A stretch of 64,000 nt of DNA, from positions 186,001-250,000 of IMG/VR virus record IMGVR_UViG_3300017991_005548; one strand, written 5' to 3'. A program made the translations under genes and the position numbers. The notes beneath the pieces are model-generated. The model made no database searches, was not told where the DNA came from, and saw only the letters and a list, made by a program, of their open reading frames with translations. This document shows positions 525-56,749 of this stretch, piece by piece. Every line of letters begins with the position of its first letter. Within the stretch, counting starts at the first letter, position 1.

Positions 525-739
525 TATCCAGAATATCCCGTTTTTATATCGCGATACCAATCGCCAAGTCGCAATTCCATATCACCACTTTTCTCTTTTT
601 CAATCTCTTCCATGTTTTTTCTAAGTCTAGACATTGGTTTCAAACGCCCCTGATCCAATGTATCAAAAGATCCATTGACACAAGATTTGTAAATTTCCAT
701 TTTTCTAGCATATCTAGCGAATCTGTTCTTTATCCTCAT
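524..739 (-). CDS. Hypothetical protein, 71 aa
   Basis: Translationally coupled to both neighbours. Confidence 0.55.
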   Translation of the reverse strand: MRIKNRFARYARKMEIYKSCVNGSFDTLDQGRLKPMSRLRKNMEEIEKEKSGDMELRLGDWYRDIKTGYSG

Positions 740-1434
740 GGAGACTCCCTTCCAAATTGAATATCATCAGTAGGTGTTTTGTAAGAATCAAATAAACTAT
801 GTCTTGCGAATCTCTTGCCAACATGTTCTTGACCCATCAAGATCACATTTCCAGTAATAATACTGTCCATAGAAAACATAGCAAGCTTTCTTTGCTCTGT
901 TCCGTACTGAGAGACATCTGGAGACTGTTCTGCGGCAAATAGGCGGTCATACGCATACGATACGGCCAATCTAGCTGTAACCAAAGGAATAGGATCTGGA
1001 TATTCCAATATGCTGATTAAACTATCAGCGTCATAACTGGAAGTAACTGAGTTCAGAATCAATTGATCTAAATTAGGAATTGATTCAATAACCGCTTCTT
1101 CATAATCACATTCACTTTGAAGTCTAACTAACTGACCTTTGGCGAATGGCCCAGTATCATGAACTGAAACTTTTACATTTGTTCCAGAAGAAACATTATT
1201 GAGGATCTCTGTTTCATGGATTTTGATTCGCCTCAATGGACATACATATATTGGGCGAAGTCTTGCGTCAACTTCCTGTTGGGCAAACTTAATGAATTCG
1301 CAAATCTGATCTGGAGTAAATTTACTCCTATTTGTATTATCACATTTGCCAGGAACAGGAGTTCCTATGTTTCTGTCGCCAACTGTAACATTCTCAGGTA
1401 GTAATGTGATGGCATTTTGAACTGTACAATACAT
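736..1434 (-). CDS. Head-tail adaptor-like protein (DUF1320/Mu gp36-like with an insertion)
   Basis: N-terminal MYCT, FAQQEVDARLRPIYVCPL and C-terminal IPLVTARLAVSYAYDRLF pattern; position in the structural module. Confidence 0.55.
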   Translation of the reverse strand: MYCTVQNAITLLPENVTVGDRNIGTPVPGKCDNTNRSKFTPDQICEFIKFAQQEVDARLRPIYVCPLRRIKIHETEILNNVSSGTNVKVSVHDTGPFAKGQLVRLQSECDYEEAVIESIPNLDQLILNSVTSSYDADSLISILEYPDPIPLVTARLAVSYAYDRLFAAEQSPDVSQYGTEQRKLAMFSMDSIITGNVILMGQEHVGKRFARHSLFDSYKTPTDDIQFGRESP

Positions 1435-1444
1435 ACTTCACTCC

Positions 1445-1488
1445 AAAAAAAAGCACTCTTGTTATTTATTTCAATAACAGGAGTGCTT
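1445..1488 (-). terminator. Rho-independent terminator ending the actin operon; loop is GAAATA
   Basis: 16-bp stem AAGCACTCCTGTTATT/AATAACAAGAGTGCTT with 1 mismatch, followed by a T run. Confidence 0.8.
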
Positions 1489-1514
1489 TTCCCTATGGAG
1501 CTAGGTCTATAGTT

Positions 1515-1730
1515 TTATAGATCGTACAGATAATCCCCGATATTTATGAACTCAAAAGCTACATCATTTACTCTGTTCACTTTATCGGTTGTTTCTGAAT
1601 TCCTTTCACTACATTCACAAATTCCATCATACCAAGGAAAAGTACATTGCGTACATAATCCATTCGCTTTTGCCCAAGCGATATGATCTTTAAGATACTT
1701 TCGTTTCTCTTTCCGTTCTTGTTTAGTCAT
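1515..1730 (-). CDS. Small Cys-rich (zinc-binding) protein
   Basis: CTQC and GICEC motifs; coupled to the actin-like gene. Confidence 0.6.
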   Translation of the reverse strand: MTKQERKEKRKYLKDHIAWAKANGLCTQCTFPWYDGICECSERNSETTDKVNRVNDVAFEFINIGDYLYDL

Positions 1731-2818
1731 TATTTGTTTTTCTTTTGGAAATCTGCTTGCGCTCTAATGCAAGAACCCTGAGAAACAGAATAAAATGGAC
1801 TTTTGGAATGCCTTACTTGCCAGACATCAAATGGAAACTCAGAATCGTCCAAGCATTCCTTAAACATCTTACAATATCCCTTAGGCATCGAAGTCCCCCC
1901 AGAAATTACAATTTCAATTTCACCATCAATCTCTGCGTCTTTGGACCTAAATTCCTGAGACATATGATGGATAATACGATTGATTGTCTCTTGGTAGTAA
2001 ATTCTTAAAGCCGCGAGAACTCTATCACTCATATCAAATGATCCAAGATCAAGTTTCTTTTCTTTTTGCTTCAGAACTTTACTTGGAGCTACTCCTGTTA
2101 CTTTTGACGCTTGTTCGTCAATATAATCTCCACTCTTCGTAATTGAGAATGTGTTTAGACTCATTCCTTTCAAGCAAAGAGCAACATTTGTCATTCCACC
2201 TCCGCAACTAATTGCAACGCCAGTCAAAGGCATTTCACCGTCATCAGTTTTAGCAATAGGAGCGCAGTCATAGGCAACGGCCATACCTTCATTTACAGGT
2301 TTGGCATCATATCCCATTTGATCAAAGAAACTTTTAAGAACCATTTCGTGGAATCTGTTGTCCATATCTCGATCAAGAGGATTGGCAGGAACTGAGAACC
2401 TAAGTGGTTCGTTATCTACAATTGGTTCTCCAACAACAGCTTTGATAATGTAGAACAACAACTCAGAGGATTCTTTAAGATTTGGATTAAGAATACCATC
2501 TTTCATTGGTCGAACAACTTCACCTTTACCAATTGCATTTACAAGTCTCAAAGCGTCTTCGCCAACGATATAATATTTCTTTCCGACTTTTACATAAAGA
2601 TAGTCACTTCTATCCAAAAGATCGACAGCTTCTTCTGAAACGTCCAGTGGATAAAGCATATCTCTATGGAATCTGTTGACAAAAGTTCCATCTTCGGTTT
2701 GTCTTGCTACAACGATGTTGCTTGTTCCAACATCAACACCTACTCCAGGCTTGTACTTCTTTTTACCAGCCTTTTTCTCAACGGGAGTCTCATCTACATC
2801 AAGTATATCATCGCTCAT
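1730..2818 (-). CDS. Actin-superfamily ATPase (MreB/ParM-like)
   Basis: Phosphate-1 VGVDVGTSNIVV, connect VNEGMAV, phosphate-2 ISCGGGMTNV, adenosine ISGGTSMPKG. Confidence 0.85.
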   Translation of the reverse strand: MSDDILDVDETPVEKKAGKKKYKPGVGVDVGTSNIVVARQTEDGTFVNRFHRDMLYPLDVSEEAVDLLDRSDYLYVKVGKKYYIVGEDALRLVNAIGKGEVVRPMKDGILNPNLKESSELLFYIIKAVVGEPIVDNEPLRFSVPANPLDRDMDNRFHEMVLKSFFDQMGYDAKPVNEGMAVAYDCAPIAKTDDGEMPLTGVAISCGGGMTNVALCLKGMSLNTFSITKSGDYIDEQASKVTGVAPSKVLKQKEKKLDLGSFDMSDRVLAALRIYYQETINRIIHHMSQEFRSKDAEIDGEIEIVISGGTSMPKGYCKMFKECLDDSEFPFDVWQVRHSKSPFYSVSQGSCIRAQADFQKKNK

Positions 2819-2820
2819 TT

Positions 2821-3210
2821 TTAGTCCTCCAGATCAGTTAGTAAATCGATTGTATTGTTAGTCTGATCATTATCTTTCTTTGTTTCTTTGACTCCACCCA
2901 AATCATCAAAGTTAGATGATTTATCACCTCTTTGTATCGTCATTGTTTTTGCCAATTGGTCCATTGAGGAAGTGTCATCAAATTCATCTTCTTCTTTGGA
3001 AGAATCCTTATATATTATACCAGAATTCTTGGGTAAATCTATACCTTGGGACACTTTATTTGCTATTAAATTAGCCAAAGCTTCGAGGTCAACATTATTG
3101 CCCTGTTGATCTTCTTTTGGCAGTTCCGCTGGTTTAGACCTTTTTCTATAATCAGCCATTAGAATATCTTTGTTTGTGGTAGTGGGGATTGTTTCTGTTT
3201 TTTCTGCCAA
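2821..3210 (-). CDS. Hypothetical acidic protein, 129 aa (TTG start)
   Basis: Fills the operon directly upstream of the actin-like gene. Confidence 0.6.
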   Translation of the reverse strand: MAEKTETIPTTTNKDILMADYRKRSKPAELPKEDQQGNNVDLEALANLIANKVSQGIDLPKNSGIIYKDSSKEEDEFDDTSSMDQLAKTMTIQRGDKSSNFDDLGGVKETKKDNDQTNNTIDLLTDLED

Positions 3211-3362
3211 CCACCAAAATCAAAAATATTTAGGTGATTGCATTTCTTGTTTCTACACTGGAACGAAAGTGTTTTTTGTTTAAAATCAAATTCTAGGCAA
3301 AGGTCATCATCTTTTTGCATAAAAAGATTTGTACAAGCTTCGCATCTACAAGCAATTTGCAT
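3159..3362 (-). CDS. Small zinc-finger protein
   Basis: MQIACRCEAC...CRNKKCNH; AAGGAG Shine-Dalgarno and TGTATAAT upstream favour the ATG at 3362. Confidence 0.65.
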   Translation of the reverse strand: MQIACRCEACTNLFMQKDDDLCLEFDFKQKTLSFQCRNKKCNHLNIFDFGGWQKKQKQSPLPQTKIF

Positions 3363-3395
3363 AAGGCATCTCCTTTTGGAGATATTATACAAATT

Positions 3396-6300
3396 TTACC
3401 AAGCCCCTTCGATACCAACATTCTCTTCTTCAGATGGTGTTTGATTTTCAGATGGTGTTTGATTTTCAGATGGTGTTTGATTTTCAGATGGTGTTTGATT
3501 TTGAGGGGGAGGTTGCTGTTGTTGTGGGTTCCAATAGTGATCATTAAGATATTTTTCAACAATATTGACCGATCTTTCTAATGTTTCAATCGATCCTTGA
3601 TTAAATGTAGAAGGATCTTTGCCCAAATAACTCTTTAACACATTCATATGAGATTTAAAATTCCCACTTTCCCCTGCTGAAATCTTTTTTAAGTTAAAAA
3701 TATGTCGATTTCCCTGAGCTTGATTTCCCTGAGCTTGGGTCAATGTTTTTAATAAAGCAACATATTCTTTTAAATCGTTAAATGATTCTTGAGTTACTTC
3801 ATTTATACGATTTGGATCTCCCAATATATCAACAACTTGTTGGGCAGATTGTCTTCGTGCAATTAGCTCATTATTTCCAGCCATTTGATTAGATCGTTGC
3901 TGTTGTTGTTGTTTAAATTCATTTAATTTAGCAATCACACCATTTCTGAAGTAATCTAGATTATTCTGGAATTCCTGAGAATTTACATCACCAAATATGT
4001 TGAGATTTTCTTGTACGATAGCATCCCCAAGAGTAAAATCGTTAGTCATATAATCTATCGCATCATCTGCACTATAACGTGGCATTACTTTTATATCTGT
4101 CGTAAACTCATTAAAAGATCTCATTATTAAATGATCTAAATTCTCGTCAATTATTCGTATAGGTGGCTGTTCTTCAGCAGTCTGCTCTTCAGCAGTCTGC
4201 TCTTCAGCAGTTTCTGCACCTTCTGTCACAACAGTAGCTCCATTATTGATCGCGGTAAAATATGAAAATAGCTTCTGAATTTCATTAAGGTCAAGATTCT
4301 GATAGCTACCCATTTTCTTAATAAGATTCTGCAACTCTGTAGTCAATTCTACTGTCTGACCGTTTTCAGCGGCCTCAACAATTCTTCTAATGGCACTGGC
4401 CGTTTGTTGGTTTGTTAATTTTTCACTGAGTTTATTTAAATAAGAAAGGACATAGCTTGCCTGCTGTTGATCAACACTCATCGTTGGGTTCTCTTCCAAC
4501 GTTTCAAGTAGTCTTGTACAATTTGCTTGTTGAGCTAGGGTAACATTTTCTGAAAGAACTTCAGCAGGAATACCACTTTCTTCTGGTTCAGTCTCAGATT
4601 CTGGTTCAGGTTCTGTCTCAACTGACTCAGGAATAGTATCTAAGAATCTCAAAATAGCATCTGCTTGAGACTTGGTGATCTTTGTAAATTCCCCTCTTAT
4701 GAAATCATCTAACCCTGCTACAGTTGAATCAGGAGTGTCTACTGGAGTTGTGCCAGTTGATCCAGATTCTTCTCCTCCCTCAGGAGCGGTAGGAGCAGTA
4801 GGAGTTGTGCCAGTAGATTCATTTCCTCCTGTTCCAGGAGTTGTGCCAGTAATCTCAGGAGCCGCAATTTTCTCTAACATTTCATTTGAAGACGCAACAT
4901 TAGGCATTATTCTTGTACCAGTAGGAGTAGATATTTGTTCAGGAGCCGCAGTGCCTCCAGGCAATGCGACTGGCATATCTGCTCCATCAACAGGTTCCGC
5001 TATAGGTATCGGATTATCAATAGTGTGTTTGATTTGTCCAAGGATCTTCTTGCAAAGCTCAATATTGGCCGCATTCATTCCTGTAACATTTGCACGATTG
5101 TTTTCCAAATCTGTCAATGCCGCTCTTATAGATGTTTCATCTGAACCGATTAGTTGTGCGATGTAATTCATGGTATTCTGGTCAGATCCAGACTCTTCTT
5201 CAACTTCTTCAGTACCTTCGGTTTCTTCAGCGCCTTCAGCACCTTCGGTTTCTTCTCTTTCCCCGCCAAATGTTTCCGCAAAATTCTCTCCCATCAATTC
5301 TTTGGTAAAATTGGTATTGAGAATCTTCTGAGCACTTGCTAACATAGCGTCTGCTTGTTGTTTTAGCTCTTGGATCTTTAATTCATATTCTTCGCCACCA
5401 TCTCTTCCATGCCATTCTCCTTCAAGGATACCTGCATCTCTAACATATCTACCAAAGAAATCAACAAGATTTTCCCAAGATCGTTTCAACCAATCAAGGT
5501 CTTCTGTGAATTGTTGATCAACATCCTCTTTATGCCATTGTTCGCCCTTCTGTTCACCTGGATCAACCAGTTGATAACCTTCTGGGACACCCTGCTTCCC
5601 TGTCAAGTTATCCCATGCCCCTCTAAGACGATCTCCGAGGCCCTGTGCGGTTCGAACGAACACTCTCGACTCTTGATTCAACTTAGCATGTCTAAGCAGA
5701 ATATTAATCTCCTTAGCGTCATAATAGGCTTGAGGATTGTTGTCTCTTAGATTCTTAGCATATGAAATGAGTTTCTCAGGTAAAAGTCCATAACCTTCAA
5801 GATTGGAAGAAAGACGAATTATGTCTTTTATATAAGCACTAGAAGGGACGAGGCTCTGCATGCCACCCATATTGGCCATGTATGCTTCAGCACTATTTAA
5901 TGTTTGCTCATAAATTACCCGAGCGGCATCGGCATTCTGATTCAACTGTTGAGCATTATTTTGAATTTCTTCTGTCTGAGTCATCAAAGTATTAACAATA
6001 TTTTGGAAGATTACTCTGTGCTGTTCTGTCATCATCTGAGCTTGAGGATATCTTTTCATGAAATCTGTTAATGTTTGGTCAACATTCAATGAGAAATCAT
6101 TCAAGCCTGTTTGCATTTCTTCCAATGCGTTATAAATATCTGTATTTTCTTGAATTGCCGCATCAATTTCACTAGATGGATCTGGCAAATTGGGCTGTTG
6201 AGCTATTTTTTTAATTTTCATATTTTTGTTCGCCTTCTTCCACTTTAAATTCTTGTATCTTGGCGGCAACTTGGTTTTAGCCTTATATCTTGCCTTAAAC

Positions 6301-6542
6301 TCTTCGTCTTTAACGCCATAATGGTCAATCAATTCCATAATCCGTCCAATCTCTGCACAAAGTAATTGAACTTCTCTTGGATTTGTATAAACCTTTGTTA
6401 ACTCTTCAGATGAAGGAAGTTGTCTAATTCTCTCATTAATGGTATCAAGTGCGTCCGTTTCAACAAAAGCCAATCCAGACATCTTCAGTCCATGAATAAT
6501 GGACATCATATCTTGTAAATCGATGTTTTGAATTGGCTCCAT
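3396..6542 (-). CDS. Large low-complexity/coiled-coil protein, 1048 aa, probable internal virion protein
   Basis: Long ORF with E/T/P/Q-rich tracts; internal MKIKKIAQQ and EKIAA motifs. Confidence 0.75.
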   Translation of the reverse strand: MEPIQNIDLQDMMSIIHGLKMSGLAFVETDALDTINERIRQLPSSEELTKVYTNPREVQLLCAEIGRIMELIDHYGVKDEEFKARYKAKTKLPPRYKNLKWKKANKNMKIKKIAQQPNLPDPSSEIDAAIQENTDIYNALEEMQTGLNDFSLNVDQTLTDFMKRYPQAQMMTEQHRVIFQNIVNTLMTQTEEIQNNAQQLNQNADAARVIYEQTLNSAEAYMANMGGMQSLVPSSAYIKDIIRLSSNLEGYGLLPEKLISYAKNLRDNNPQAYYDAKEINILLRHAKLNQESRVFVRTAQGLGDRLRGAWDNLTGKQGVPEGYQLVDPGEQKGEQWHKEDVDQQFTEDLDWLKRSWENLVDFFGRYVRDAGILEGEWHGRDGGEEYELKIQELKQQADAMLASAQKILNTNFTKELMGENFAETFGGEREETEGAEGAEETEGTEEVEEESGSDQNTMNYIAQLIGSDETSIRAALTDLENNRANVTGMNAANIELCKKILGQIKHTIDNPIPIAEPVDGADMPVALPGGTAAPEQISTPTGTRIMPNVASSNEMLEKIAAPEITGTTPGTGGNESTGTTPTAPTAPEGGEESGSTGTTPVDTPDSTVAGLDDFIRGEFTKITKSQADAILRFLDTIPESVETEPEPESETEPEESGIPAEVLSENVTLAQQANCTRLLETLEENPTMSVDQQQASYVLSYLNKLSEKLTNQQTASAIRRIVEAAENGQTVELTTELQNLIKKMGSYQNLDLNEIQKLFSYFTAINNGATVVTEGAETAEEQTAEEQTAEEQPPIRIIDENLDHLIMRSFNEFTTDIKVMPRYSADDAIDYMTNDFTLGDAIVQENLNIFGDVNSQEFQNNLDYFRNGVIAKLNEFKQQQQQRSNQMAGNNELIARRQSAQQVVDILGDPNRINEVTQESFNDLKEYVALLKTLTQAQGNQAQGNRHIFNLKKISAGESGNFKSHMNVLKSYLGKDPSTFNQGSIETLERSVNIVEKYLNDHYWNPQQQQPPPQNQTPSENQTPSENQTPSENQTPSEEENVGIEGAW
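3429..3502. repeat. 18-bp coding tandem repeat x4 (NQTPSE)
   Basis: TTCAGATGGTGTTTGATT repeated four times in frame. Confidence 0.95.
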
Positions 6543-6555
6543 CTCAATTCTCCTT

Positions 6556-6957
6556 TTATGGAAGTCTTGGGATCGAAGGAACGTTTACCATGCGAATTTT
6601 GCCAACTGAAGCGGCTTGAGGTCTGTCACTTACAATCTCTTCAATTGGTTCTTCATCTAACTCTTCGTCGTCTTCCACAACTTCGTCTTCAATAGCTTCT
6701 AACTGTCTTTTGGACTTAATACCGTCTGCGGCCATTGCCAAAAGGACTTCTGCCATTTCATCAAGTTTGTCATAGAATACTTCTAGTTGTTGTTTTCTAT
6801 CAGCCAAATCCTGAGCATCGATACAAGTCTGAACTTTGTCTTGGAAATCTCCCAACTCTTTCATAAGAGTCAAGACAGCGCTAGTACCCGCACCTTTTTT
6901 CTTCTTGCTTTCAGATCCAGCGATTGTGATAATATTACTGTTCATATTATTCTCCAT
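6556..6957 (-). CDS. Hypothetical protein, 133 aa
   Basis: ORF downstream of an AGG-N19-GAA motif. Confidence 0.7.
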   Translation of the reverse strand: MENNMNSNIITIAGSESKKKKGAGTSAVLTLMKELGDFQDKVQTCIDAQDLADRKQQLEVFYDKLDEMAEVLLAMAADGIKSKRQLEAIEDEVVEDDEELDEEPIEEIVSDRPQAASVGKIRMVNVPSIPRLP

Positions 6958-7004
6958 ACTAAATAATCATTTAGATTTTTTCTCAAAAATGCAAAGCCAT
7001 CCCT

Positions 7005-11394: not shown

Positions 11395-11469
11395 TGGTGC
11401 CCCTGCTGGGACTCGAACCCAGATTAGCAAGGTTAGAGCTTGCCGCTTTTGCCTTTAAGCTACAGAAGC
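11395..11469 (-). tRNA. Amber suppressor tRNA, anticodon CUA
   Basis: GCTTCTG TA GCTT AAAGGCAA AAGC G GCAAG CT-CTA-AC CTTGC TAAT CTGGG TTCGAGT CCCAG CAGGGGC A CCA: full cloverleaf with encoded CCA. Confidence 0.92.
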
Positions 11470-12749: not shown

Positions 12750-14225
12750 TTAAGCTCCATTTAACTCCATGATTCTTTTATAGACATTATCTATGGCCTG
12801 ATCCCAGGTGTAGAACTCTTCTAAATCTGACCTTAAATTATCAGCTTTGTCCAAAGAATCCTCGTAGTTTTCAAACACATATCTCATATGTGCTTTAGTT
12901 TCTTCAATCGCATTCCTTCCAAAATTTGGGAAGGTTTGGTCTTCATAAAAACGGCAGTGTTTTGCTAGTTTTCTCAGATGACCATTTGTTTCTGCTGTTA
13001 CAAGACCGTCTGGTGCAACCATATATGCATTGCTGTCGTTTAAGAAATCTGAATGACCAGAACAATCGCTTGCAATTACGGGCATTCCACTTGCTCCAGC
13101 TTCTGCATATGGAAGTCCAAATCCCTCACCGCGAGAGATTAAAACAAAGGCATCAGCAGAACCATAGATATTGGGCATATACCTTTCTGGAATCTCGTTA
13201 TCATACAAAGCGATATGAGGCAACTCATCATCACTTTTATTTATAGATTCTCTAATTCCTGCGAAATCTTTCTGGATCTGGTTTTGATCATTAAAAGCTT
13301 CTGCTCTGGATACAAGAAGTAATGTGACATTGTCATCTGCCGAAAATTCTTCCATAAATGCTTTTAGAAGTATGTCGTAACCTTTTCTATATCCCCATTT
13401 GAATACACTTAGAAAGACAAAATCATTTAACTCCTGATTGAAATCGAAATCTTTTCTGTCAGGAGTGTATCTATCCACATCAACTCCTAAAGGCATAACC
13501 AAAACTGGGGGATGAACCCCATTTTGCTTAAACATTTCTTGAGCGAATCTAGTTGGAACCCATATCTCATCAAAGAGATTAAGCTTCCCAACATAATCTG
13601 GATGCAGAGAACCAGAAGTTTCCATCATTGTGTAAAGAATTCTCCTTCCACCATGGAACATATTCAAAGGTATCGTAGCTCCAAATATTTTTGGGGCATT
13701 GTCAGCAATGGCTGTTCTACTCATTCTTCGAATTTGCTTCTCAGTTTCTTCATTCACATGAACATCTGACTCCTGAATATCAAGCTTAACTCTTAATCCT
13801 CTATTAGCAAGTCCAAATGCAAAGGCTCTATTCATTCGACTAAACCCTGCATAACTGGTGAAATGCCCGTACCAATGAACACTTGGGTTATTACTCAGGT
13901 CATAATTTATGTTGTAGGACTCTTGCACTTTTACCTCCCGTATAGGAATTTTTTTGGGCTTTATCTCTCTACTCTCTTTAACTGTGGGTTTATGACCTTT
14001 TAAAGCATCATATTCTTCAATTAAAGACACTGTTCCATTTGACCCATCCGATTCAATAACTACTGTTTGAAATTCTTGAGGGCCATCTGGATGCTTCCAA
14101 CACTCAACAAAATCTGGCAGTTCAATATCTGGATCGTCATTTTCAGTATTTAGAATCTTCATCTCTGGCTTTGGCACTATGACTCTTTCACATGCCAATT
14201 CATATGCCGACTTAATTTTTGACAT
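12750..14225 (-). CDS. GT-B glycosyltransferase, family 4-like
   Basis: SRGEGFGLPYAEAGASGMPVIASD and KWGYRKGYDILLKAF motifs. Start uncertain (14225 or 14240); the ORF-track start at 14411 overlaps the divergent gene. Confidence 0.85.
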   Translation of the reverse strand: MSKIKSAYELACERVIVPKPEMKILNTENDDPDIELPDFVECWKHPDGPQEFQTVVIESDGSNGTVSLIEEYDALKGHKPTVKESREIKPKKIPIREVKVQESYNINYDLSNNPSVHWYGHFTSYAGFSRMNRAFAFGLANRGLRVKLDIQESDVHVNEETEKQIRRMSRTAIADNAPKIFGATIPLNMFHGGRRILYTMMETSGSLHPDYVGKLNLFDEIWVPTRFAQEMFKQNGVHPPVLVMPLGVDVDRYTPDRKDFDFNQELNDFVFLSVFKWGYRKGYDILLKAFMEEFSADDNVTLLLVSRAEAFNDQNQIQKDFAGIRESINKSDDELPHIALYDNEIPERYMPNIYGSADAFVLISRGEGFGLPYAEAGASGMPVIASDCSGHSDFLNDSNAYMVAPDGLVTAETNGHLRKLAKHCRFYEDQTFPNFGRNAIEETKAHMRYVFENYEDSLDKADNLRSDLEEFYTWDQAIDNVYKRIMELNGA

Positions 14226-14304
14226 AAGTAGAATTTGCATACCCTTTTGTGCATTATACATATTTTCAGGGTATAATTTAGTAAACCGCATAGGAGAACA
14301 GACA

Positions 14305-14628
14305 ATGAAAAGATGGGAAGCTGTAGGTAAAAATGATAGTGAGATCAATGAAGATGACATCAATTGGGAGTTGGTAAAAAACAGAGTCAAGTCTCTCCAA
14401 TTAAACAACAATGGTCAAATCATCCGTTTGCCTGACAATATGGAATATATACAAGGGAAGACTGCCAGTGCCAATCTTATGGGTGGAAAAGTTCAGATTG
14501 AATCTAGGTATGTTGGCATAAAAGTTGGAAATAATATAGTTAAGATACGAGTGGATGAAAAAACCAACGATATTTCCATAGAGGTAGAAGATGACCCCAA
14601 TTACATACCTAATCCAAAACAGGACTAG
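14305..14628 (+). CDS. Hypothetical protein, 107 aa
   Basis: GGAG SD before MKRWEAVGK; divergent TATAAT promoter at about 14273. Confidence 0.7.
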   Translation: MKRWEAVGKNDSEINEDDINWELVKNRVKSLQLNNNGQIIRLPDNMEYIQGKTASANLMGGKVQIESRYVGIKVGNNIVKIRVDEKTNDISIEVEDDPNYIPNPKQD

Positions 14629-15016
14629 AATTCCCATCAATACTTTGGATGCAAAGTCCTTAACATTTGGTATGGTGGCTCCAAACGAAACGGCCCAAAC
14701 CAATATCGTACAGCTTTATGTACCAGATGCCGCCGCAATTACCAATATTCGACTTGCATTAATCGATACTGGAGGTATAATGTTTGGATCTACTACTTTT
14801 GGAGTAGATAACAGATCGTTTATCGACAATAATGTAGTACCCGAATCATTTTTTCAAGGTGTTAGCGACAAAAGCGTAAATTCGCCTTACAATATATCAG
14901 TAGCAAACCTAAATAGATTAGCCAGTGAGTACATATATCTGAATGTGGATATCCCAATTGGTCAAACTTTTATCGCTGGAACAATAAGATATCAATGGCT
15001 TTTTGACTATGCATAG
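14591..15016 (+). CDS. Hypothetical beta-rich protein, 141 aa
   Basis: GAGGT SD; operon with the CCA enzyme. Confidence 0.65.
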   Translation: MTPITYLIQNRTRIPINTLDAKSLTFGMVAPNETAQTNIVQLYVPDAAAITNIRLALIDTGGIMFGSTTFGVDNRSFIDNNVVPESFFQGVSDKSVNSPYNISVANLNRLASEYIYLNVDIPIGQTFIAGTIRYQWLFDYA

Positions 15017-15023
15017 GGGTAAT

Positions 15024-17030
15024 ATGAGAGTACAAATACAACCAACAAAAGACGAACAAGAGCTTTTTGAACTATTAAGGAATACAGTTAAGAAAGTGGC
15101 CCCTGGAACTTCATTAAGAGTTGCAGGCGGGTGGGTTCGTGACAATCTTCTAGGGAAGAAGTCAAATGACATTGATTTCATGGTTGACAACATGTCTGGA
15201 GAGCAAATTGCTCGATTAATCACAAATGAGCTTGGTCTAAGTGGACCCCATGTTGTTCAAGCAAACCCAGATGCCTCCAAACATTTGGAAACCGCTGGAG
15301 CAGAAATCCCCATATCAAATGGCAAGGTGTTTGATCTTGATTTTGCCATCGCAAGACAAGAAATTTACCATGATGACTCAAGAATTCCTGAGATCAAACC
15401 AGCGACTCCAGAAGAAGACGCTTTCAGAAGGGATTTGACCATTAATTCTATGTTCTACAATATTATGACTGGAGAACTGGAAGATTTCACTGGAAGAGGA
15501 ATGGAAGATCTTAAGAGTAGAACAATTAAAACTCCTGAAGACCCACTGAAAACATTCAAAGATGACCCTTTAAGAATTTTCAGAACTATTCGTTTCGCTT
15601 CAAGGTACAATGGTAATATTGACCCAGAAACACTTTCTGCTATGAATAATCCAGAATTACATAGCGAAATTAGAGAAAAAGTGTCAAAAGAGAGGATTCA
15701 AGAGGAACTCTTCAAAACAATGAAGGGACCAAATCCTCTGATGGCCATCAATTTGCTGAAAGAAACTGGCATATTCAGAGACATCATAGAAGATGCTGTC
15801 AAAGGTAGTAAATTTGAAGGAAAAATCGCTCCACTTGACATGGAGCAGAACAATCCTCATCATGAGCTAACGGTTTGGGGTCACACCCTAAAAGTTGTCG
15901 AAAATCTGTTGATGTACTATCCAGACACAGATCCTGAGAAACGTGCTATCATGATCCTAACAGCGGTTATGCATGATTTAGGGAAGCTTTATTACGACAT
16001 TCATGTCGATAAGGGGGATCAAACTTCTTACTATGGACATGCAGACGCTAGTGGTGAAATTGCTGAGATGATTATGCGTTACTTGAAGTTTAATAACAAA
16101 ATGATTGATCAAGTCTCCAAGATGTCAAAGCATCATATGAGAGTTCACTTGGTTGAAAATGACAAAAACTTAAGTGGCGAAGGAAAACGTTTGGCATTTT
16201 TCAGAAAATTTATTAGAAAGATGCTGGCTGAAGGTATCGATGCGATGGACATAATGAATCTTTCTATTGCTGATGCTTATAGCAAAGGTCACAAAATTGT
16301 TGATCCTTCAGTAGTTAAAAACTATCAACTTTTAAAAACTCAACTTGAGCAGGCTTTGGCTTCAATAAGTGTTGACCAAAATCAAAAGAAAGTTGTCCCA
16401 GTGTTGAATGGACGAGAAATTATGACTATTCTAAACATTAATCCTGGGTGCATGGTTGGTGATGCGACTAGATTTGTTTATGAGTTAATGGATGAGAATC
16501 CTAAAATCACCAAAGATGAGGCCGCAGAAAGATTAGTTGAAGAGTTCGCACACAAAATTGACAACGAAGAAAAAATTAGGCAAGCTTCTGCATGTCCAAA
16601 GCATCTTCTGTTTAGCAAGATTGATGAAATAAAAGAAGCGATTAATGATGAGAATTGTGACAGAGCAATTACAATTATGACCACTCTCAAGAAAGAGAAT
16701 GAAGATGACGAAAGTGTATATGCAGAAATTGCGAACCGTATGCTTGATGTCTTGCTTATAGACCGTTCGAAAAGGAACTTTGAACTTCTAGGTTATGTAT
16801 TTGACAAAGCAATAGATAACTTCTTTGATGTAGAAGTTTGCATACCTGTTCTTGGAATCTTGTTACTCTTAAAGACAGGTACAAAAGAAGAGCATATAGA
16901 AACATTATGTGAAAGAATGAAGAACATGGCGAATGATAAATTACAAGTCATGTTAAAGAAATTACCTGATGATGCTTATCATAAGAAATTCATAAAAAGG
17001 TTAAAGAATGGAAGATGTAACTGCAAATGA
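15024..17030 (+). CDS. cca: Class II tRNA nucleotidyltransferase (CCA-adding/poly(A) polymerase family) with HD domain
   Basis: VAGGWVRD..DIDF, EDAFRRDLTINS, DDPLRIFRTIRF, SKERIQEEL, then HHELTVWGHT and MHDLGK. Confidence 0.88.
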   Translation: MRVQIQPTKDEQELFELLRNTVKKVAPGTSLRVAGGWVRDNLLGKKSNDIDFMVDNMSGEQIARLITNELGLSGPHVVQANPDASKHLETAGAEIPISNGKVFDLDFAIARQEIYHDDSRIPEIKPATPEEDAFRRDLTINSMFYNIMTGELEDFTGRGMEDLKSRTIKTPEDPLKTFKDDPLRIFRTIRFASRYNGNIDPETLSAMNNPELHSEIREKVSKERIQEELFKTMKGPNPLMAINLLKETGIFRDIIEDAVKGSKFEGKIAPLDMEQNNPHHELTVWGHTLKVVENLLMYYPDTDPEKRAIMILTAVMHDLGKLYYDIHVDKGDQTSYYGHADASGEIAEMIMRYLKFNNKMIDQVSKMSKHHMRVHLVENDKNLSGEGKRLAFFRKFIRKMLAEGIDAMDIMNLSIADAYSKGHKIVDPSVVKNYQLLKTQLEQALASISVDQNQKKVVPVLNGREIMTILNINPGCMVGDATRFVYELMDENPKITKDEAAERLVEEFAHKIDNEEKIRQASACPKHLLFSKIDEIKEAINDENCDRAITIMTTLKKENEDDESVYAEIANRMLDVLLIDRSKRNFELLGYVFDKAIDNFFDVEVCIPVLGILLLLKTGTKEEHIETLCERMKNMANDKLQVMLKKLPDDAYHKKFIKRLKNGRCNCK

Positions 17031-17616
17031 AGTCGCTTCATACGTTGAGGCATTAAATGTAGCCAATATGGATGGCGAGATAAAGAAACCAGAAGTGCTT
17101 GGAGTTTTGCAATCTCTTCCATCCCCAAATCACATCAAAAGATACTTATCAAATGAAGAAGCAAGAGTCTTGTTTGAAAGCATCCGATGGATTTGGAAAG
17201 AAACAAGTGGTAAAGATATTAGTGAGACATTTAATTTCGAGCCTGCTCCAGAATCATTGCTAGGAAATTACTGGATGCTAAGGAATGGTCTGATCTTTCA
17301 TGGTATCAACCATTATGGCATCATTAAAAGAAATATGACGCTCTTTTCTAACGTCCTGAAGTTAGAGCCGTTTGTACTGCATCAGAAGCTTGCAGGCATA
17401 CCACAAGACCTAATTAAGTACGTTATAGACAATGGGGGGATGAGAATCTTCGTTACGGCTGACAAAAGAGCATATTTCCAAATGAATGATCAGGTTTATG
17501 CCAATTGGGGTAGGGCCAAAGTTAAAGGACTGGACTTCGGAAACAAAGTGGTCAAACTTGTTGACCCCACTACCCGATTTGACGGTTGGAACTCTGGAAT
17601 TACCTTAAAACTCTAG
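17008..17616 (+). CDS. Hypothetical protein, 202 aa
   Basis: Coupled to cca; convergent stop overlaps the next gene (CTAG). Confidence 0.7.
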   Translation: MEDVTANEVASYVEALNVANMDGEIKKPEVLGVLQSLPSPNHIKRYLSNEEARVLFESIRWIWKETSGKDISETFNFEPAPESLLGNYWMLRNGLIFHGINHYGIIKRNMTLFSNVLKLEPFVLHQKLAGIPQDLIKYVIDNGGMRIFVTADKRAYFQMNDQVYANWGRAKVKGLDFGNKVVKLVDPTTRFDGWNSGITLKL

Positions 17617-28265: not shown

Positions 28266-31200
28266 TTAACGTTGGTCGTTGTCAATCAAGTTGTCATTTA
28301 ACAACTTGGAACCAATCGTAAACGCTCCAGCGATTTTGTCCTGGAAGCTAGGCTCCTGGGCAGGCTGTGATTGAATTACGATAGCTGGAAGACCAGTTCC
28401 AGCAGTTTTAACTTGCTGTTCAGTAGAAGCAGTTTTAACGGCCTTAACTGGGAACATAGTTTCCGCAACTGAAGCAATTTTATCAACTTCAAACTGAGCT
28501 AATGCAGTAACAACATTATCAAATGTGCTCTTATCAGAAGCAATTCTGTTGTTAGCGGCTAACCATGAAGCAGTACGAAGAGCTTCCTCTTTACGTGCTT
28601 CCTTGATTCTAGCAAGTTGTTCTTCTCTTTTCTGTTGTACCTGTTTGAGATACTTATCATTGATGCCAGGCATATCTGACTGAGTTTCCTTCTCAACGCC
28701 CATATAAGCGTTATCGATAGGTACATCAGGCTTAGGTGCGTTAACGTCGATGTTATCTGGTCCTTCCTGTCCCATAGTAGCTTTTGCTCTAGGAACGTCT
28801 GGATTTGCCATCTTTACATCGATGTTGTCAGCGCCTTCATGACCCAAAGAAGCATCGGCTCTAGGAACTCCAGCTTCAACATCACCCTCAACGGTGTCAA
28901 CTTCTTTCATCTTTTTCGCTAATGCAAGCTGTCTCTGAGCCTCTTTGAGGTTTTTCTCAGCTTCAGCAATTACAGTACCTTTAATCTCATTATTGATTGC
29001 AGGCATATCTGATTGAGTAGCTTTCTCAATTCCCATGTAGGAACTATCAACAGCTACGTCTGGCAGACCAGCAGGTGGATTAATGTTATCTGCGCCTTCA
29101 TGGCCCATGGTAGCATTAGATCTAGGAACCTGAGGTTTGGCCATAGGAACGTCAATATTATCTGCTCCTTCATTCATCATAGTTGCCTTACTACGAGGTA
29201 CTCCAGCTTCAACGTCTTTCTCAATAGTTTTGATGAGCTTAGGCTTACCTGCCAACTTAATGTTGGACTCAGCGCCAGAGCGTCTTACTCTTGAGGAATT
29301 CATTGCCAAAGCCTCTGCAAGTGCGTCGGTATCAAATGTTTCCATATCTTCTCCTTCTGGAACTTCTTCAGCTTCAAATGCAACGTCCTCTGCGATGTCC
29401 TCTTCCAAGGCTTCATCACCAGTATTTTCAACAACTTCGAGGTTGTCTCCAGTGATGGTTACAGATTCAACTGCGACTTCTTCTGGTTCTTCAATAATCT
29501 CATCAACCTCTACATCGACTGAGTCGAGTGGTTCGAGATCATCTCCGATTTCAACTTCTTCCAAGATAGCCTGAGCTTTCTTGGCTAAGTTTTCTTCTTT
29601 CTGAATGAACAATTCGTTCATTGTAGCGAGATCGTATTGGCTAAGTGCAATCTTTCCTTCTTTTGCTTCATCAGCAAAAGCTTGGACGTAAATGTTATCA
29701 GATTCTTCTTTAGCGAACTTCTTCTTAATGCAGTTGCAAATTGAAGTTGCTTGAACAACATCATGTCCTTTGCTCTTTTGATCTTCAATACATTCATCCA
29801 TTGGATCTACTTGCATTAAAGTGTCAGCCAATTTTTTCATTTGACGGACTTTGGTAAAACCAAGTCTCTTCAGTTCTTTGCATACGCATTCAGCCAATGG
29901 CTTATCTTTGCAAGGACCGAATCTAGCTACAGTGTTTCCACCATAAGTTCTAGCAATTCTTTCAACGCAGTTAGCAGTTGGGAACGTATCGGCGTTAGCC
30001 TGAGCAGTCTTCAACATTCCAACAACCTTAAGCTTAGAAGCGAACTTCCTTGCTTCTTCTTTGCATTCTGGGCAACTATTGTCAGGAGAAAGATCCCATT
30101 CAACTCTTAACAAGCCGTTTGAAGGATTCTTACTACTAACAATGAGGTTCTTCTCGAAAGAAGTTCCGCATTGTCCGCATTCGCATTTGGTGCGACCATC
30201 GCCGCTTGCGATGACATCACATTTCTTATTTCCGCAAGCTGGGCAGACATCGCCATGGGCCTCTCTGTTAGCGGCAATACGAACAATAGAATCTTTATCA
30301 ATTCTAGTTTGAGCGGCAACTGGAAGTGCTGGCATTTCTTCAGGCTCTTCAGGGCCTTCAACGTCTTCCATACCTTCTTCGCCAACGCTTTTGGTAGGTT
30401 TGATGATTCTAAATTCAATTTCTTTCTTAATGAGAGCTTCGTATTCGGCTCCGCAATTCTGGCAGTTACCGATAATTCCACCGTCATCTTCTTTAGTTAC
30501 ATCAACATCAGATGAACCACACTCTGGGCAAATGCTCCAAGGAGCTTGCTTTTCGCCAACAGTTGGGATCTCATCCTCTAACTCATCCTCATTACCAGTG
30601 GTGAGAGCTTGAAGAGCAGGATCTTCTCCCATTGGAGGAGCGTCAAGACCTTCCTCAGGAGCGCCTGGAGCGGCGACTTCGCCTGCGGCCCCTGGCATTC
30701 CGCCACCCATTGGTGACTGAGCAGTTCTTTTCATCTTCTTATTATTATAGGCAACCTGATTAAGGTTTTCCATTTCAATATCAGCGTCAAGTCCGTCCTC
30801 AATGCCTTCTCCTACGAGATCGCCTTCAGGAACGATTTCTTCTTCAATTGGTGCTACTTCTTCGCCAATCGGAATTTCAACTGACTCTTCGCCAGCATCA
30901 GTCTGGACAGCGATTTGAATGGTATTACCATCAATAGTAACATTAGTGATAGAAGCAAGCTTCATATTTTCAGTTGCTAAAGCGCCTTTAGCAAACTTAA
31001 CGATATCTTTCTTGAAAGTGGCAGAAGTCTTTTGAGAACCAAGTTCTTCGAAATCGGTTTCAATTACGATGTCTGCTCCATCAAGTTTTTCAGGATTAAG
31101 AATTTCTTCCTGAGCCTGGACTCGCTTTCTTGATTCCAAAGAAGCTAGAATTTCTTCTCTTTCAGCATCTCTTTTAGCCTTTTCGTTTTTAACGACAGCT

Positions 31201-55932: not shown

Positions 55933-56749
55933 AATATTCCTCCAATATATAAACACAACCATTGTCTGATGGACAAAAGGTCAGAATTTTATTTCCAACC
56001 TTATATATTTCAAACAAATGAGTCGCATCTCCTTCAGAGGAAAGCATATGCACAGTATTGTCACTTAAAAAGAAAAGTTTGTTCTTGACATAATATATGT
56101 CTTTTAGGTCTTTGCAGTCATCGATAATTGTGTACGTTGAGTTTTTTCGTATCCCCCTTAAGCAATTGTTACCACTGTCTGCAAAACAGACAGTTTTTCC
56201 CATTATTGCAACTCCAGTTGGTTTAGAAATCCTCGTATTTTTTAAATTTGATATTGAGAATCCAGCCTTACCACAACCTATAAGTGGAAAGGCGTTCTCC
56301 TCATTCATTATAAAGCATCTGTGACAATTTGTAGTGCTCCAGATGACTTGATTTTCTAATGAAGTTACATAAGTCCTTGAGTCGCTTCTTCCAAGGACTT
56401 TTCTTCTAAATTGTTTAGCACTGTTTTTTGAGATCAAATTCTCAAAATCCATCAACTCCAAATCGACTTTGTGAATTCGGCTACCACCTTCTGAAACTAT
56501 ATATAAACAATCATAACTGGAATTATAGCATATCGAACTGAAAGTTGAAAAGTCTGGCTTCTCAGTATATGTGAGTTCATAACGCCAATCAGGATTGCAG
56601 TCGCCATTATTCATCTTTCCTATGCCATCATCATGTAGGAAAAACAGATTATCCCCAACACAACAAAAATCCTTGATCTCGAAGTTGATCTCGAAATTTC
56701 GTTGTTTTCGGGTGGTAAGGTTCTTTTCTGTAAGTTTATAGATCATCAA
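55898..56749 (-). CDS. Beta-propeller (NHL-like) protein
   Basis: KPTGVAI...FADSGNNCLRGI. Confidence 0.6.
   Translation of the reverse strand: MMIYKLTEKNLTTRKQRNFEINFEIKDFCCVGDNLFFLHDDGIGKMNNGDCNPDWRYELTYTEKPDFSTFSSICYNSSYDCLYIVSEGGSRIHKVDLELMDFENLISKNSAKQFRRKVLGRSDSRTYVTSLENQVIWSTTNCHRCFIMNEENAFPLIGCGKAGFSISNLKNTRISKPTGVAIMGKTVCFADSGNNCLRGIRKNSTYTIIDDCKDLKDIYYVKNKLFFLSDNTVHMLSSEGDATHLFEIYKVGNKILTFCPSDNGCVYILEEYYVESPEEAESY

What the first reader, a model, noticed from the sequence alone, without database searches (positions are those of the whole stretch)
1515..3391. Actin-like ATPase operon with zinc-finger partners next to neck genes
Seen: all actin motifs are present, but the phosphate-2 Asp is replaced by Ser (ISCGGG). 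It is co-transcribed with two small Cys-rich proteins and an acidic 129-aa protein from a TGTATAAT promoter. Established: jumbo-phage positioning systems are best known for tubulin PhuZ, and plasmid ParM-type actins work with a small adaptor. Inference: an actin-based DNA or capsid positioning system.
Basis: partly seen in the sequence, partly recalled or inferred. Interest (0 to 1): 0.6.

Follow-up and report, generated by a model that had tools for sequence, protein, structure and literature searches.

The report
Megaphage actin operon beside neck genes
A very large uncultured phage carries a highly conserved bacterial-type actin gene, related to the filament-formers Mad28 and volactin, in a small operon with two partner proteins right in front of its neck and tail genes, which suggests that this phage lineage builds its own actin cytoskeleton late in infection.

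Summary
Window 1730..2818 (-) encodes a 362-aa actin-fold protein. It matches Pfam PF25216 (Volactin) over the full profile (E 3e-63), and its nearest solved folds are BeeR, MreB, MamK and crenactin.

The Ser in place of the phosphate-2 Asp is not an oddity. It is invariant in this phage clade and present in 95 of 97 distant relatives. It is also the published hallmark of Mad28, the magnetotactic-bacteria actin that polymerises in vitro.

The gene is tightly packed with three others. A TGTATAAT motif lies upstream and a strong hairpin downstream. Two partners are conserved: a 67-aa four-Cys zinc ribbon and a 112-aa (not 129-aa) acidic protein. Both are present in 42 of 45 related loci that have enough flank. 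The second Cys-rich gene (71 aa) is an accessory gene in a variable slot.

A complex prediction places the acidic protein's conserved C-terminal helix in the cleft between actin subdomains IA and IIA (ipSAE 0.73, best control 0.00).

The next gene downstream is a Mu gp36-like head-tail adaptor, and a tail-tube gene follows a few genes later.

Best reading: a filament-forming actin module of a phage genome of at least 0.5 Mb, co-located with neck and tail genes. The cargo is unknown. No centromere-like repeats were found. I found no paper that describes it.

The parts
3384..3391 (-). TGTATAAT extended -10-like promoter motif, 22 nt upstream of the first ATG of the operon
   Evidence: Sequence. 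There are 8 copies in the window, all on the - strand, against 2.4 expected. The 296-kb record has 29 on the - strand and 6 on the +, mostly just upstream of SD+ATG. Function is inferred.
3159..3362 (-). 67-aa basic (pI 8.8) four-Cys zinc-ribbon protein; a conserved partner
   Evidence: ATG at 3362 preceded by AAGGAG. In a 50-sequence alignment (A5), C7, C10, C36, C41, N45 and P62 are invariant and the tail W..K...SPLP is conserved. It lies directly upstream of the acidic gene in 42 of 45 loci with enough flank. No Pfam or PDB relative was found.
2821..3159 (-). 112-aa acidic (pI 4.4) partner with a conserved C-terminal amphipathic helix ...NTIDLLTDLED; predicted actin-cleft binder
   Evidence: The start overlaps the preceding stop as TAATG. 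In a 51-sequence alignment (A6) the C-terminal half is conserved, including F60, N83, F84, L87, G88, T103, I104, D105 and L107. Complex prediction gave ipSAE 0.73 against a best control of 0.00, with interface residues 87-111. A homologue is present even in the deepest clade member, L107.
1730..2818 (-). 362-aa actin-like ATPase of the Volactin/Mad28 family (PF25216) with Ser204 in phosphate-2
   Evidence: Pfam E 3.3e-63, profile positions 3-321 of 321. AF2 model pLDDT 86.7. Foldseek top hits are MamK, MreB and actin. VIA-align gives BeeR Z 24.3, MreB 23.1 and crenactin 22.8. There are 368 homologues and the top 120 are at least 62% identical. S204 is invariant.
1515..1730 (-). 71-aa Cys-rich (CxxC...CxC) accessory gene in a variable slot; not a conserved partner
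   Evidence: The start overlaps the actin stop as TAATG. A homologue is found only in L026 (the same phage) and L028 (86% actin identity) among 85 loci. The same slot holds a LAGLIDADG gene in L009, and a thioredoxin-like gene (my reading of its CxxC motif) plus a Cys-rich gene in L071.
1441..1490 (-). Intrinsic-terminator-like hairpin plus U-tract ending the operon
   Evidence: 18-nt arms, 94% complementary. RNA fold -31.3 kcal/mol, z -6.33, with 0 of 200 shuffles folding as well.
736..1434 (-). 232-aa head-tail adaptor (neck) protein, Mu gp36/HK97 gp6-like with an inserted beta-barrel; the conserved downstream neighbour
   Evidence: AF2 model pLDDT 76.8. VIA-align Z 11.5 to the Mu neck subunit 5ydn_A, 11.5 to the JBD30 connector 8rka_B and 11.2 to the Mu neck 9khx_A. 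The Atlas gave a lead to Phage_Mu_Gp36. The gene lies downstream of the actin gene in nearly all loci.
3396..6957 (-). Conserved upstream neighbours: a 133-aa acidic protein (6556..6957) and a 1048-aa acidic repeat protein (3396..6542) with a conserved ~130-aa N-terminal domain. They may belong to the same module.
   Evidence: Both are found in the same order in most loci that have enough flank. The large protein's length ranges from 118 aa (L107) to 1048 aa. No family or Atlas hit. The repeats lie inside the coding sequence.

Best explanation
This is a phage-encoded actin cytoskeleton module of a lineage of very large phages. The same genes lie on contigs of 476, 508 and 525 kb.

The 362-aa protein belongs to the Volactin/Mad28 family of bacterial and archaeal actins. 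It most likely binds nucleotide and assembles into filaments. This is inferred from family membership, the fold, and very strong sequence constraint.

Its phosphate-2 Ser and the Met that follows the GGG replace the Asp and Thr that MreB has at these positions. They are family traits. They probably make hydrolysis slow or different, which would favour stable filaments (inferred).

The 112-aa acidic protein is predicted to insert its conserved C-terminal amphipathic helix (TIDLLxxL) into the cleft between subdomains IA and IIA, at the 'barbed' face. There it would act as an end-binding adaptor or as a regulator of assembly (predicted, not shown).

The 67-aa basic zinc ribbon is a third conserved component. 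Its contact is unknown, and it may link to the cargo.

The module always sits directly in front of the head-tail adaptor, neck and tail-tube genes. It probably acts late, organising or positioning virion assembly intermediates in the host cell (inferred from gene position only).
For: Family and fold:
- PF25216 full length, 214.6 bits, against MreB_Mbl 31.6 bits and partial.
- AF2 model pLDDT 86.7.
- The top structural neighbours are filament formers: MamK, MreB, actin, BeeR and crenactin.

The Ser is a family trait:
- Invariant in 29 clade members.
- Present in 95 of 97 representatives at 29-60% identity.
- The Mad28 genes of magnetotactic Nitrospirota fall in the same Pfam family (274.7 bits) with GISMGGGM.
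- The literature states that Mad28 has xxxSxGxGxx, polymerises with ATP-gamma-S and forms filaments in cells (PMC10653835).
- Volactin forms dynamic filaments (PMC10869688).

Constraint: in 26 loci that hold all four genes, median identity to the window is actin 66%, adaptor 51%, zinc ribbon 49% and acidic protein 38.5%. In the tree the clade has a long stem and short internal branches.

Partners:
- 42 of 45 loci have both upstream genes.
- The start and stop codons are coupled.
- Complex prediction gave ipSAE 0.76, 0.73 and 0.70 against a best control of 0.00. That mark was reached by 58 of 80 solved complexes and 2 of 110 mismatched pairs. The three runs agree in at least 44% of contacts and partner pLDDT is 44-46.
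- The interface joins acidic residues 87-111 to actin residues 128, 183, 186, 197-198, 217-219, 339-343 and 347-362.

Context: the adaptor fold of the next gene and the tube gene downstream.
Against: - No polymerisation, expression or localisation data exist. No RNA run holds this DNA.
- Fold comparison alone does not separate filament formers from Hsp70 nucleotide-binding domains: BiP scores Z 21.9 against 24.3 for BeeR.
- The complex prediction used my own alignments and three chains, unlike its calibration. The partner is mostly disordered (pLDDT under 50). A helix in an actin cleft could be drawn from memory of solved complexes.
- The zinc ribbon showed no confident contact with the acidic protein, the only chain scored.
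- Three related loci lack both partners (L070, L071, L088), so the actin can exist without them nearby.
- More distant homologues sit in other gene contexts, so the link to virion genes is clade-specific. L106 lies beside ClpP, resolvase and glycosyltransferase genes, and the neighbours in L010 are not recognisable.
- The same TGTATAAT motif precedes many genes across the genome, so it says nothing about timing.
Confidence: 0.55

Rival explanations
1. It is a ParMRC-type DNA segregation or positioning system. The actin pushes or positions phage genomes, for example in a plasmid-like carrier state. The zinc ribbon would be the DNA-binding adaptor and the acidic protein the link to the filament.
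For: - The arrangement of an actin plus small co-transcribed partners resembles ParMRC, and also the prophage AlpAC system, in which the adaptor AlpA binds DNA and AlpC (PMC4446434).
- The zinc ribbon is basic, pI 8.8.
- The helix-in-cleft prediction resembles ParR on ParM (the comparison is from my own knowledge).
- IMG/VR labels the record 'provirus'.
Against: - There are no iterated or inverted repeats in or around the operon that could serve as a centromere. All repeats lie inside the 1048-aa coding sequence or form the terminator, and the gap upstream of the operon is only 33 nt.
- No ribbon-helix-helix or HTH domain was found in either partner.
- The operon is fixed in the neck/tail module in more than 40 loci and does not sit near replication or partition genes.
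- The deepest clade member keeps the acidic protein but shows no zinc ribbon.
Confidence: 0.15
2. It is a non-filamentous actin-fold assembly factor, working like PilM, FtsA or an Hsp70-type chaperone. It would bind a peptide of a partner and help assemble the neck or tail of a very large virion.
For: - The gene sits at the head of the neck/tail module, directly before the head-tail adaptor.
- PilM, FtsA and Hsp70 nucleotide-binding domains score close to the top in the fold search, Z 20-22 against 24.3.
- Peptide-in-groove binding is also how PilM holds PilN (my own knowledge), and the partner's predicted interface is a short C-terminal segment.
Against: - Pfam gives no HSP70, FtsA or PilM hit at E<=0.1, while Volactin is full length.
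- Both characterised family members form filaments.
- At 62-89% identity across seawater, sediment and sludge phages, the protein is more conserved than the structural proteins next to it. That pattern is expected for a polymer with multiple self-contacts.
Confidence: 0.15
3. It is a host-directed cytoskeletal effector. A phage copy of a cell-shape or curvature-sensing actin would reshape the host or block its division, for example to enlarge it for a big burst.
For: - Volactin acts in cell-shape transitions, and Mad28 localises by cell curvature (PMC12713370).
- A cellular bacterial family member lies next to Peptidase_M23, bactofilin and MreB genes (L012).
Against: - The phage clade is separate from the Mad28/cellular clade in the tree.
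- The conserved partners are phage-specific and have no cellular counterparts among the loci seen.
- Placement with neck and tail genes does not suggest an early host-takeover role.
Confidence: 0.08

Closest known systems
Mad28 (actin-like protein of deep-branching magnetotactic bacteria)
   Same: - Same Pfam family, PF25216. The Ca. Magnetominusculus copy scores 274.7 bits.
- Same phosphate-2 Ser (S-x-G-x-G) and the same non-EEP connect-1.
- 30-32% identity over the full length.
- Mad28 polymerises in vitro and forms filaments in vivo.
   Different: - The phage proteins form their own strongly supported clade, apart from the Mad28/cellular clade.
- Mad28 has an N-terminal extension of about 90 aa. 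It sits in a locus with FeoB/FeoA and a ParA-like ATPase.
- Mad28 has no zinc-ribbon or acidic partner in the loci examined, and no link to virion genes.
Volactin (Haloferax volcanii HVO_2015)
   Same: It is the namesake of the Pfam family that the phage protein matches end to end. It forms dynamic filaments that span the cytoplasm.
   Different: Volactin keeps the phosphate-2 Asp (GVDFGAGT; supplementary Fig. 8b). It is a cellular archaeal protein acting in rod-to-disk shape change. No partner genes of the kind seen here have been described.
MamK with its acidic regulators MamJ/LimJ
   Same: MamK is among the nearest solved structures. Foldseek ranks 5ljw first (E 1.9e-14), and 5ljv has TM 0.63-0.69. 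It is an actin that positions an intracellular cargo and is regulated by acidic proteins (title of reference 44 in PMC12748827; otherwise my own knowledge).
   Different: Sequence identity is only about 19-20%. MamK has the canonical Asp. No sequence relation between the acidic partner here and MamJ was tested or seen.
ParMRC, and the prophage AlpAC system of Corynebacterium CGP3
   Same: An actin-like ATPase is encoded with a small adaptor in one operon, and AlpAC is phage-borne. The acidic partner's predicted C-terminal helix in the IA/IIA cleft parallels ParR on ParM (the parallel is from my own knowledge).
   Different: - A different actin family. ParM structures score lower than MreB or BeeR: Z 17-20 against 23-24.
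- No centromere repeats and no DNA-binding domain found.
- AlpAC are early genes needed for replication, whereas this operon sits with neck and tail genes.
- There are two partners here, not one.
PhuZ/TubZ tubulin spindles of nucleus-forming jumbo phages
   Same: A phage-encoded cytoskeletal polymer used to organise infection in large-genome phages (reviews listed; my own knowledge).
   Different: Tubulin fold, not actin. No tubulin was found in the 296-kb record, and the weak Tubulin_3 hit at 56736..58103 has no support.

Membership tests
Volactin/Mad28 family (Pfam PF25216) | Full-length match to the family profile above the curated cut-off | tested here: met
   E 3.3e-63, 214.6 bits (cut-off 35), residues 26-353 on profile positions 3-321 of 321. 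The same result was obtained on the genome.
Volactin/Mad28 family (Pfam PF25216) | Actin fold with four subdomains and the nucleotide-binding motifs | tested here: met
   AF2 pLDDT 86.7, pTM 0.85. Foldseek and VIA-align top hits are MamK, MreB, BeeR and crenactin. D29, E177, G206, G208 and G307-G308 are invariant even among relatives at about 30% identity.
Mad28-type branch | Phosphate-2 motif S-x-G-x-G in place of D-x-G-x-G, and connect-1 without the EEP motif | tested here: met
   The window protein has ISCGGGM and NEG. 95 of 97 representatives carry Ser. The definition comes from PMC10653835.
Mad28-type branch | Orthology: groups with the Mad28 proteins of magnetotactic bacteria in a tree | tested here: not met
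   The quick ML tree of 62 rows places the window clade (SH-aLRT 100) apart from the starred clade that holds Mad28 and a cellular bacterial member. It is a family member but not a Mad28 orthologue.
Volactin/Mad28 family (Pfam PF25216) | Nucleotide-dependent polymerisation into filaments | not testable with these tools
   Shown only for Mad28 and volactin.
ParMRC-type segregation system | Centromere-like repeats next to the operon | tested here: not met
   The repeat finder on window 1-7200 found repeats only inside the 1048-aa ORF, plus the terminator hairpin.
ParMRC-type segregation system | Adaptor with a DNA-binding domain (ribbon-helix-helix or HTH) | tested here: inconclusive
   No Pfam, PHROG or PDB-profile hit for either partner. 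A four-Cys zinc ribbon could bind nucleic acid, but this was not shown.
ParMRC-type segregation system | Adaptor C-terminal helix binds the cleft between subdomains IA and IIA of the actin | tested here: inconclusive
   Prediction only: ipSAE 0.73 against a best control of 0.00, with acidic residues 87-111 on actin 128, 183-186, 197-198, 217-219 and 339-362. The model supports binding but does not show it.
MreB/Mbl (PF06723) | Full-length match to the MreB profile | tested here: not met
   Only residues 80-237 match, on profile positions 37-184 of 327, at 31.6 bits. This is far below the Volactin score. The best PDB sequence hit to MreB has E 0.006.
Hsp70 / sugar kinases (non-filament actin-fold ATPases) | Sequence-profile match to HSP70 or kinase families | tested here: not met
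   No such Pfam family at E<=0.1. Structurally, however, BiP and Ssb1 score Z 21-22, close to the top, so the fold alone does not exclude them.
Head-tail adaptor (Mu gp36 / HK97 gp6-like), for the 232-aa neighbour | Adaptor fold spanning the whole protein | tested here: met
   VIA-align: 5ydn_A Z 11.5 with 99 of 109 residues aligned; 8rka_B Z 11.5; 9khx_A Z 11.2; 3jvo Z 8.2. An inserted beta-barrel occupies residues 70-144. Foldseek alone was weak.

The most novel reading that the evidence does not exclude
This megaphage lineage encodes, inside its virion-morphogenesis gene block, a dedicated actin filament system: the actin, a cleft-binding acidic adaptor and a zinc-ribbon protein. The system would serve as a track, scaffold or ruler for assembling or positioning very large capsids and necks. 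That would be the first actin-based counterpart of the PhuZ tubulin spindle, evolved independently and conserved from marine water to sediments and sludge.
Probability: 0.2. Interest if true: 0.85.

Novelty: new variant of a known kind. Interest (0 to 1): 0.6.

Why it matters
- Phage-built cytoskeletons are known mainly from the PhuZ tubulin of nucleus-forming jumbo phages and from one prophage actin, AlpC.
- Here a different actin family, so far studied only in magnetotactic bacteria (Mad28) and haloarchaea (volactin), is a core and unusually conserved gene of a widespread lineage of phages with genomes of about 0.5 Mb.
- It has its own conserved partners and a fixed place beside the neck genes.
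- A 2026 review of jumbo-phage biology and a 2021 comparative-genomics survey do not mention any phage actin. No paper in the library links Mad28 or volactin to phages.
- If the filaments are real, the system gives a simple three-protein model that can be expressed in other bacteria. It could test how actin-like polymers with a Ser in phosphate-2 work, and how very large virions are organised in a bacterial cell.

Tried and rejected
1. PHROGs gave no family for any of the operon proteins or its neighbours.

2. The weak Tubulin_3 hit at 56736..58103 has no PDB or PHROG support, and no tubulin is found in the record. I dropped the idea that the phage carries both an actin and a tubulin.

3. I asked whether the conserved acidic N-terminal peptide of the actin (DDILD..) co-varies with presence of the acidic partner. 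It does not: 41 loci have the partner without the motif, and only 3 loci lack the partner.

The closer alignment found only Mad28-like genes in magnetotactic MAGs and no close relative in any of the species genomes held, so there is no host clue.

5. Profile searches of the zinc ribbon and the acidic protein against PDB sequences gave nothing below E 0.2. The Atlas search of the 1048-aa protein's N-terminal part gave no usable hit.

6. There are no RNA runs for this DNA, so read laying was not used and the promoter and co-transcription could not be tested.

7. Structural ranking as a way to exclude Hsp70 is not decisive.

8. I considered stop-codon recoding because of the tRNA with anticodon CTA. 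TAG ends about 10% of the long ORFs on the coding strand, and those ORFs cover 77% of the record under the standard code. No other code was used.

9. The centromere search found none.
Full report
**What is there**

The finding covers four tightly packed genes on the minus strand.

- After the stop of a 1048-aa ORF (3396..6542) comes TGTATAAT (3391..3384), then AAGGAG, then an ATG at 3362. This opens a 67-aa protein with the pattern CxxC...Cx4C.
- Its stop overlaps, as TAATG, the ATG at 3159 of an acidic protein.
- Two bases after that stop, the 362-aa actin-like gene starts at 2818.
- Its stop overlaps, again as TAATG, the start at 1730 of a 71-aa CxxC...CxC protein.
- A long hairpin with a U-run follows at 1449..1490: -31.3 kcal/mol, z -6.3.

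The acidic protein is therefore 112 aa (pI 4.4). It is not 129 aa from an upstream TTG. All orthologues start at the same Met.

**Promoter motif**

TGTATAAT occurs 8 times in the window, always on the coding strand, against 2.4 expected. In the 296-kb record it occurs 29 times on the minus strand and 6 on the plus, mostly 10-50 nt before a ribosome-binding site. A promoter is plausible. Transcription itself could not be checked, because no RNA run holds this DNA.

**The actin**

- Pfam places the protein in PF25216 (Volactin) over the whole profile, at E 3.3e-63 and 214.6 bits. MreB_Mbl gives only a weak partial hit, and there is no HSP70 or kinase family.
- An AlphaFold model built on 29 homologues is confident, with pLDDT 86.7.
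- Foldseek ranks MamK, MreB and actins first.
- VIA-align gives BeeR Z 24.3, MreB 23.1 and crenactin 22.8. BiP follows at 21.9, so the fold alone does not exclude chaperone-type relatives.

- phosphate-1 DVGTSN;
- phosphate-2 ISCGGGM, with Ser204 aligned to the Asp of MreB;
- adenosine motif GGTS.

**The Ser is a family rule**

- Ser204 is invariant in 29 clade members.
- An exhaustive HMMER search found 761 cluster representatives, 271 of them at E<=1e-30. Of the 97 full-length ones among the best 150, 95 have Ser at this position, usually followed by x-G-x-G-M.
- H. volcanii volactin itself keeps Asp (GVDFGAGT).
- A scan of species genomes with the clade alignment returned almost only magnetotactic Nitrospirota. 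The Ca. Magnetominusculus xianensis gene lies beside FeoB/FeoA and a ParA-like ATPase. It scores 274.7 bits for PF25216 and is 30% identical to the window protein, with GISMGGGM. I take it to be mad28, from this magnetotactic host, the actin family and the shared Ser motif.
- The literature states that Mad28 differs from MamK exactly by Ser in phosphate-2 and by a changed connect-1. It also states that Mad28 polymerises with ATP-gamma-S and forms filaments in cells (PMC10653835).

The substitution is therefore compatible with filament formation. It marks a branch of the family and is not a defect of this gene.

**Distribution and constraint**

- The word search found 368 homologues. The best 120 are all at least 62% identical and all carry PF25216.
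- The identical protein lies on contigs of 476 kb and 525 kb, and a 66% relative lies on a 508-kb contig. The 296-kb 'provirus' record is thus a piece of a larger genome of megaphage size.
- Relatives come from sediment and seawater and activated sludge.
- In a quick maximum-likelihood tree the window clade is strongly supported (SH-aLRT 100), with a long stem and short inner branches. It is separate from the clade that holds Mad28 and a cellular bacterial member.
- GenBank huge phages LR745208 and LR756511 carry homologues at 32% identity. LR745208 also holds the nearest terminase in GenBank (25% identity).

**Partners and synteny**

I collected 85 related loci.

- Of 45 loci with at least 1.3 kb upstream, 42 have both the zinc ribbon and the acidic gene directly upstream of the actin. 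Three lack both.
- The usual order is: 133-aa acidic protein; large acidic repeat protein with a conserved N-terminal domain; zinc ribbon; acidic protein; actin; variable slot; 232-aa protein; a protein of about 75 aa; a protein of about 340 aa; two Ser-rich proteins; tail tube of the Phage_tube_2 family.
- The 71-aa Cys-rich gene is found only in this phage and one close relative. Elsewhere the same slot is empty, or holds a LAGLIDADG gene, or holds a thioredoxin-like gene with a Cys-rich gene.
- The zinc ribbon has four invariant Cys and a conserved W..K...SPLP tail.
- The acidic protein has a conserved C-terminal half ending in TIDLLxxLxD.
- The deepest clade member (51% identity) keeps the acidic protein, but no zinc ribbon was seen there.
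- Across 26 loci with all four genes, median identity to the window is actin 66%, 232-aa protein 51%, zinc ribbon 49% and acidic protein 38.5%.

**Predicted contact**

One complex job was run with the actin, the zinc ribbon and the acidic protein, scoring the acidic protein as the partner.

- It gave ipSAE 0.76, 0.73 and 0.70, against 0.00 for all three controls. That mark was reached by 58 of 80 solved complexes and by 2 of 110 mismatched pairs.
- The three runs agree in at least 44% of contacts, and the partner's pLDDT is 44-46.
- The confident interface joins residues 87-111 of the acidic protein to actin residues 128, 183, 186, 197-198, 217-219, 339-343 and 347-362. In the monomer model these lie on the helices and strands that line the cleft between subdomains IA and IIA.
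- From my own knowledge, this is where ParR's C-terminal helix sits on ParM and where many actin-binding proteins dock.

The tool's caveats apply. My own alignments were used, the three-chain job is unlike the calibration, and such a pose could come from memory of solved complexes. The result supports binding but does not show it. No confident contact between the acidic protein and the zinc ribbon was listed.

**Context**

- The 232-aa downstream protein models as a head-tail adaptor. VIA-align gives Z 11.5 to the Mu neck subunit 5ydn_A, 11.5 to the JBD30 connector, 11.2 to the Mu neck and 8.2 to HK97 gp6. It carries an inserted beta-barrel. Foldseek alone was weak, and the Atlas gave the same lead. 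'Next to neck genes' is therefore correct.
- No centromere-like repeats occur near the operon.
- The record holds no tubulin.
- More distant homologues sit in other contexts, such as beside ClpP, resolvase and glycosyltransferase genes. A cellular bacterial member sits beside a Peptidase_M23 gene, a bactofilin gene and MreB.

**Interpretation**

The best-supported reading is a filament-forming actin of the Mad28/volactin family with a cleft-binding acidic adaptor or regulator and a zinc-ribbon third component, encoded with the neck and tail genes of a megaphage lineage.

- Shown: family membership, the fold, the Ser as a family trait, the conserved gene order and the neck context.
- Predicted: the actin-acidic protein contact.
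- Inferred: polymerisation, late timing and a role in organising virion assembly.

Three rival readings remain open. They are a ParMRC-like DNA positioning system, a non-filament assembly factor, and a host-shape effector.

**Literature**

None of the 14 papers listed for 'volactin' (17 hold the term) has a title or abstract that concerns phages. Searches combining Mad28 or actin terms with phage terms found only the AlpC prophage work and general reviews. A 2026 review and a 2021 comparative survey of jumbo phages do not mention a phage actin. Absence from this library is not proof of absence elsewhere.

Noticed in passing
window 11395..11469 (-): A tRNA with anticodon CTA, which would read the amber stop (ARAGORN calls it tRNA-Pyl). 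TAG still ends about 10% of the long ORFs on the coding strand, and those ORFs cover 77% of the record under the standard code, so there is no sign of recoding here.
   Followed up: partly
whole record G000; L002, L026: The 296-kb record labelled 'provirus' is part of a contig of at least 524,692 bp (Ga0180433_10000003) and of a 476-kb IMG/VR contig. The phage genome is probably about 0.5 Mb, and the provirus label looks like a trimming artefact.
   Followed up: partly
relatives P0150, P0163, P0171 (not in the window): Some family members of 700-730 aa carry an intein with an HNH or LAGLIDADG endonuclease, inserted at profile positions ~173-182. This is in the phosphate-2 loop, at or next to the Ser motif.
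   Followed up: partly
window 1434..1515 / 1515..1730, and the same slot in L009 and L071: The gap between the actin gene and the adaptor gene is a hot spot for accessory or mobile genes. It holds the 71-aa Cys-rich gene here, a LAGLIDADG gene in L009, and a thioredoxin-like gene plus a 121-aa Cys-rich gene in L071. Several loci also have insertions between the acidic gene and the actin gene.
   Followed up: partly
window 3396..6542 (-): A 1048-aa very acidic protein (pI 4.5) with in-frame tandem repeats, such as 18 nt x4 at 3429..3518 encoding QTPSEN. Only its N-terminal ~130 aa are conserved, and its length ranges from 118 to 1048 aa among relatives. No family, PDB or Atlas lead was found.
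   Followed up: partly
window 28266..33836 and 33838..37755 (-): Two adjacent giant ORFs (1856 and 1305 aa) have no Pfam hit at E<=0.001.
   Followed up: no
window 58172..61675 (-): A ribonucleotide reductase-like gene is interrupted by an intein with a LAGLIDADG endonuclease.
   Followed up: no
window 14179..17616 (+): The only block of plus-strand genes in the window, marked by a GC-skew flip. It includes a CCA-adding / poly(A) polymerase-type enzyme with an HD domain at 15003..17030.
   Followed up: no
window 56736..58103 (-): A weak Tubulin_3 hit (E 0.0037, below cut-off) has no support from PDB sequences or PHROGs, and no tubulin family match exists in the record. It is probably spurious.
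   Followed up: yes
L012 (ENA contig of 631 kb, bacterial): A cellular member of the same actin family, with Asn in place of the Ser (GVNLGGGM), lies in a run with a response regulator, Peptidase_M23, bactofilin and MreB genes. This hints at a cell-shape role for the cellular branch.
   Followed up: no
window 54097..55962 (-) and GenBank LR745208.1: The large terminase's best GenBank phage match (25% identity, 91% coverage) is the 485-kb uncultured phage LR745208. That phage also carries a 32% identical actin homologue, with the actin and terminase genes on one strand in both genomes, 52 kb apart here and 72 kb apart there. The actin may therefore be old in this group of huge phages.
   Followed up: partly
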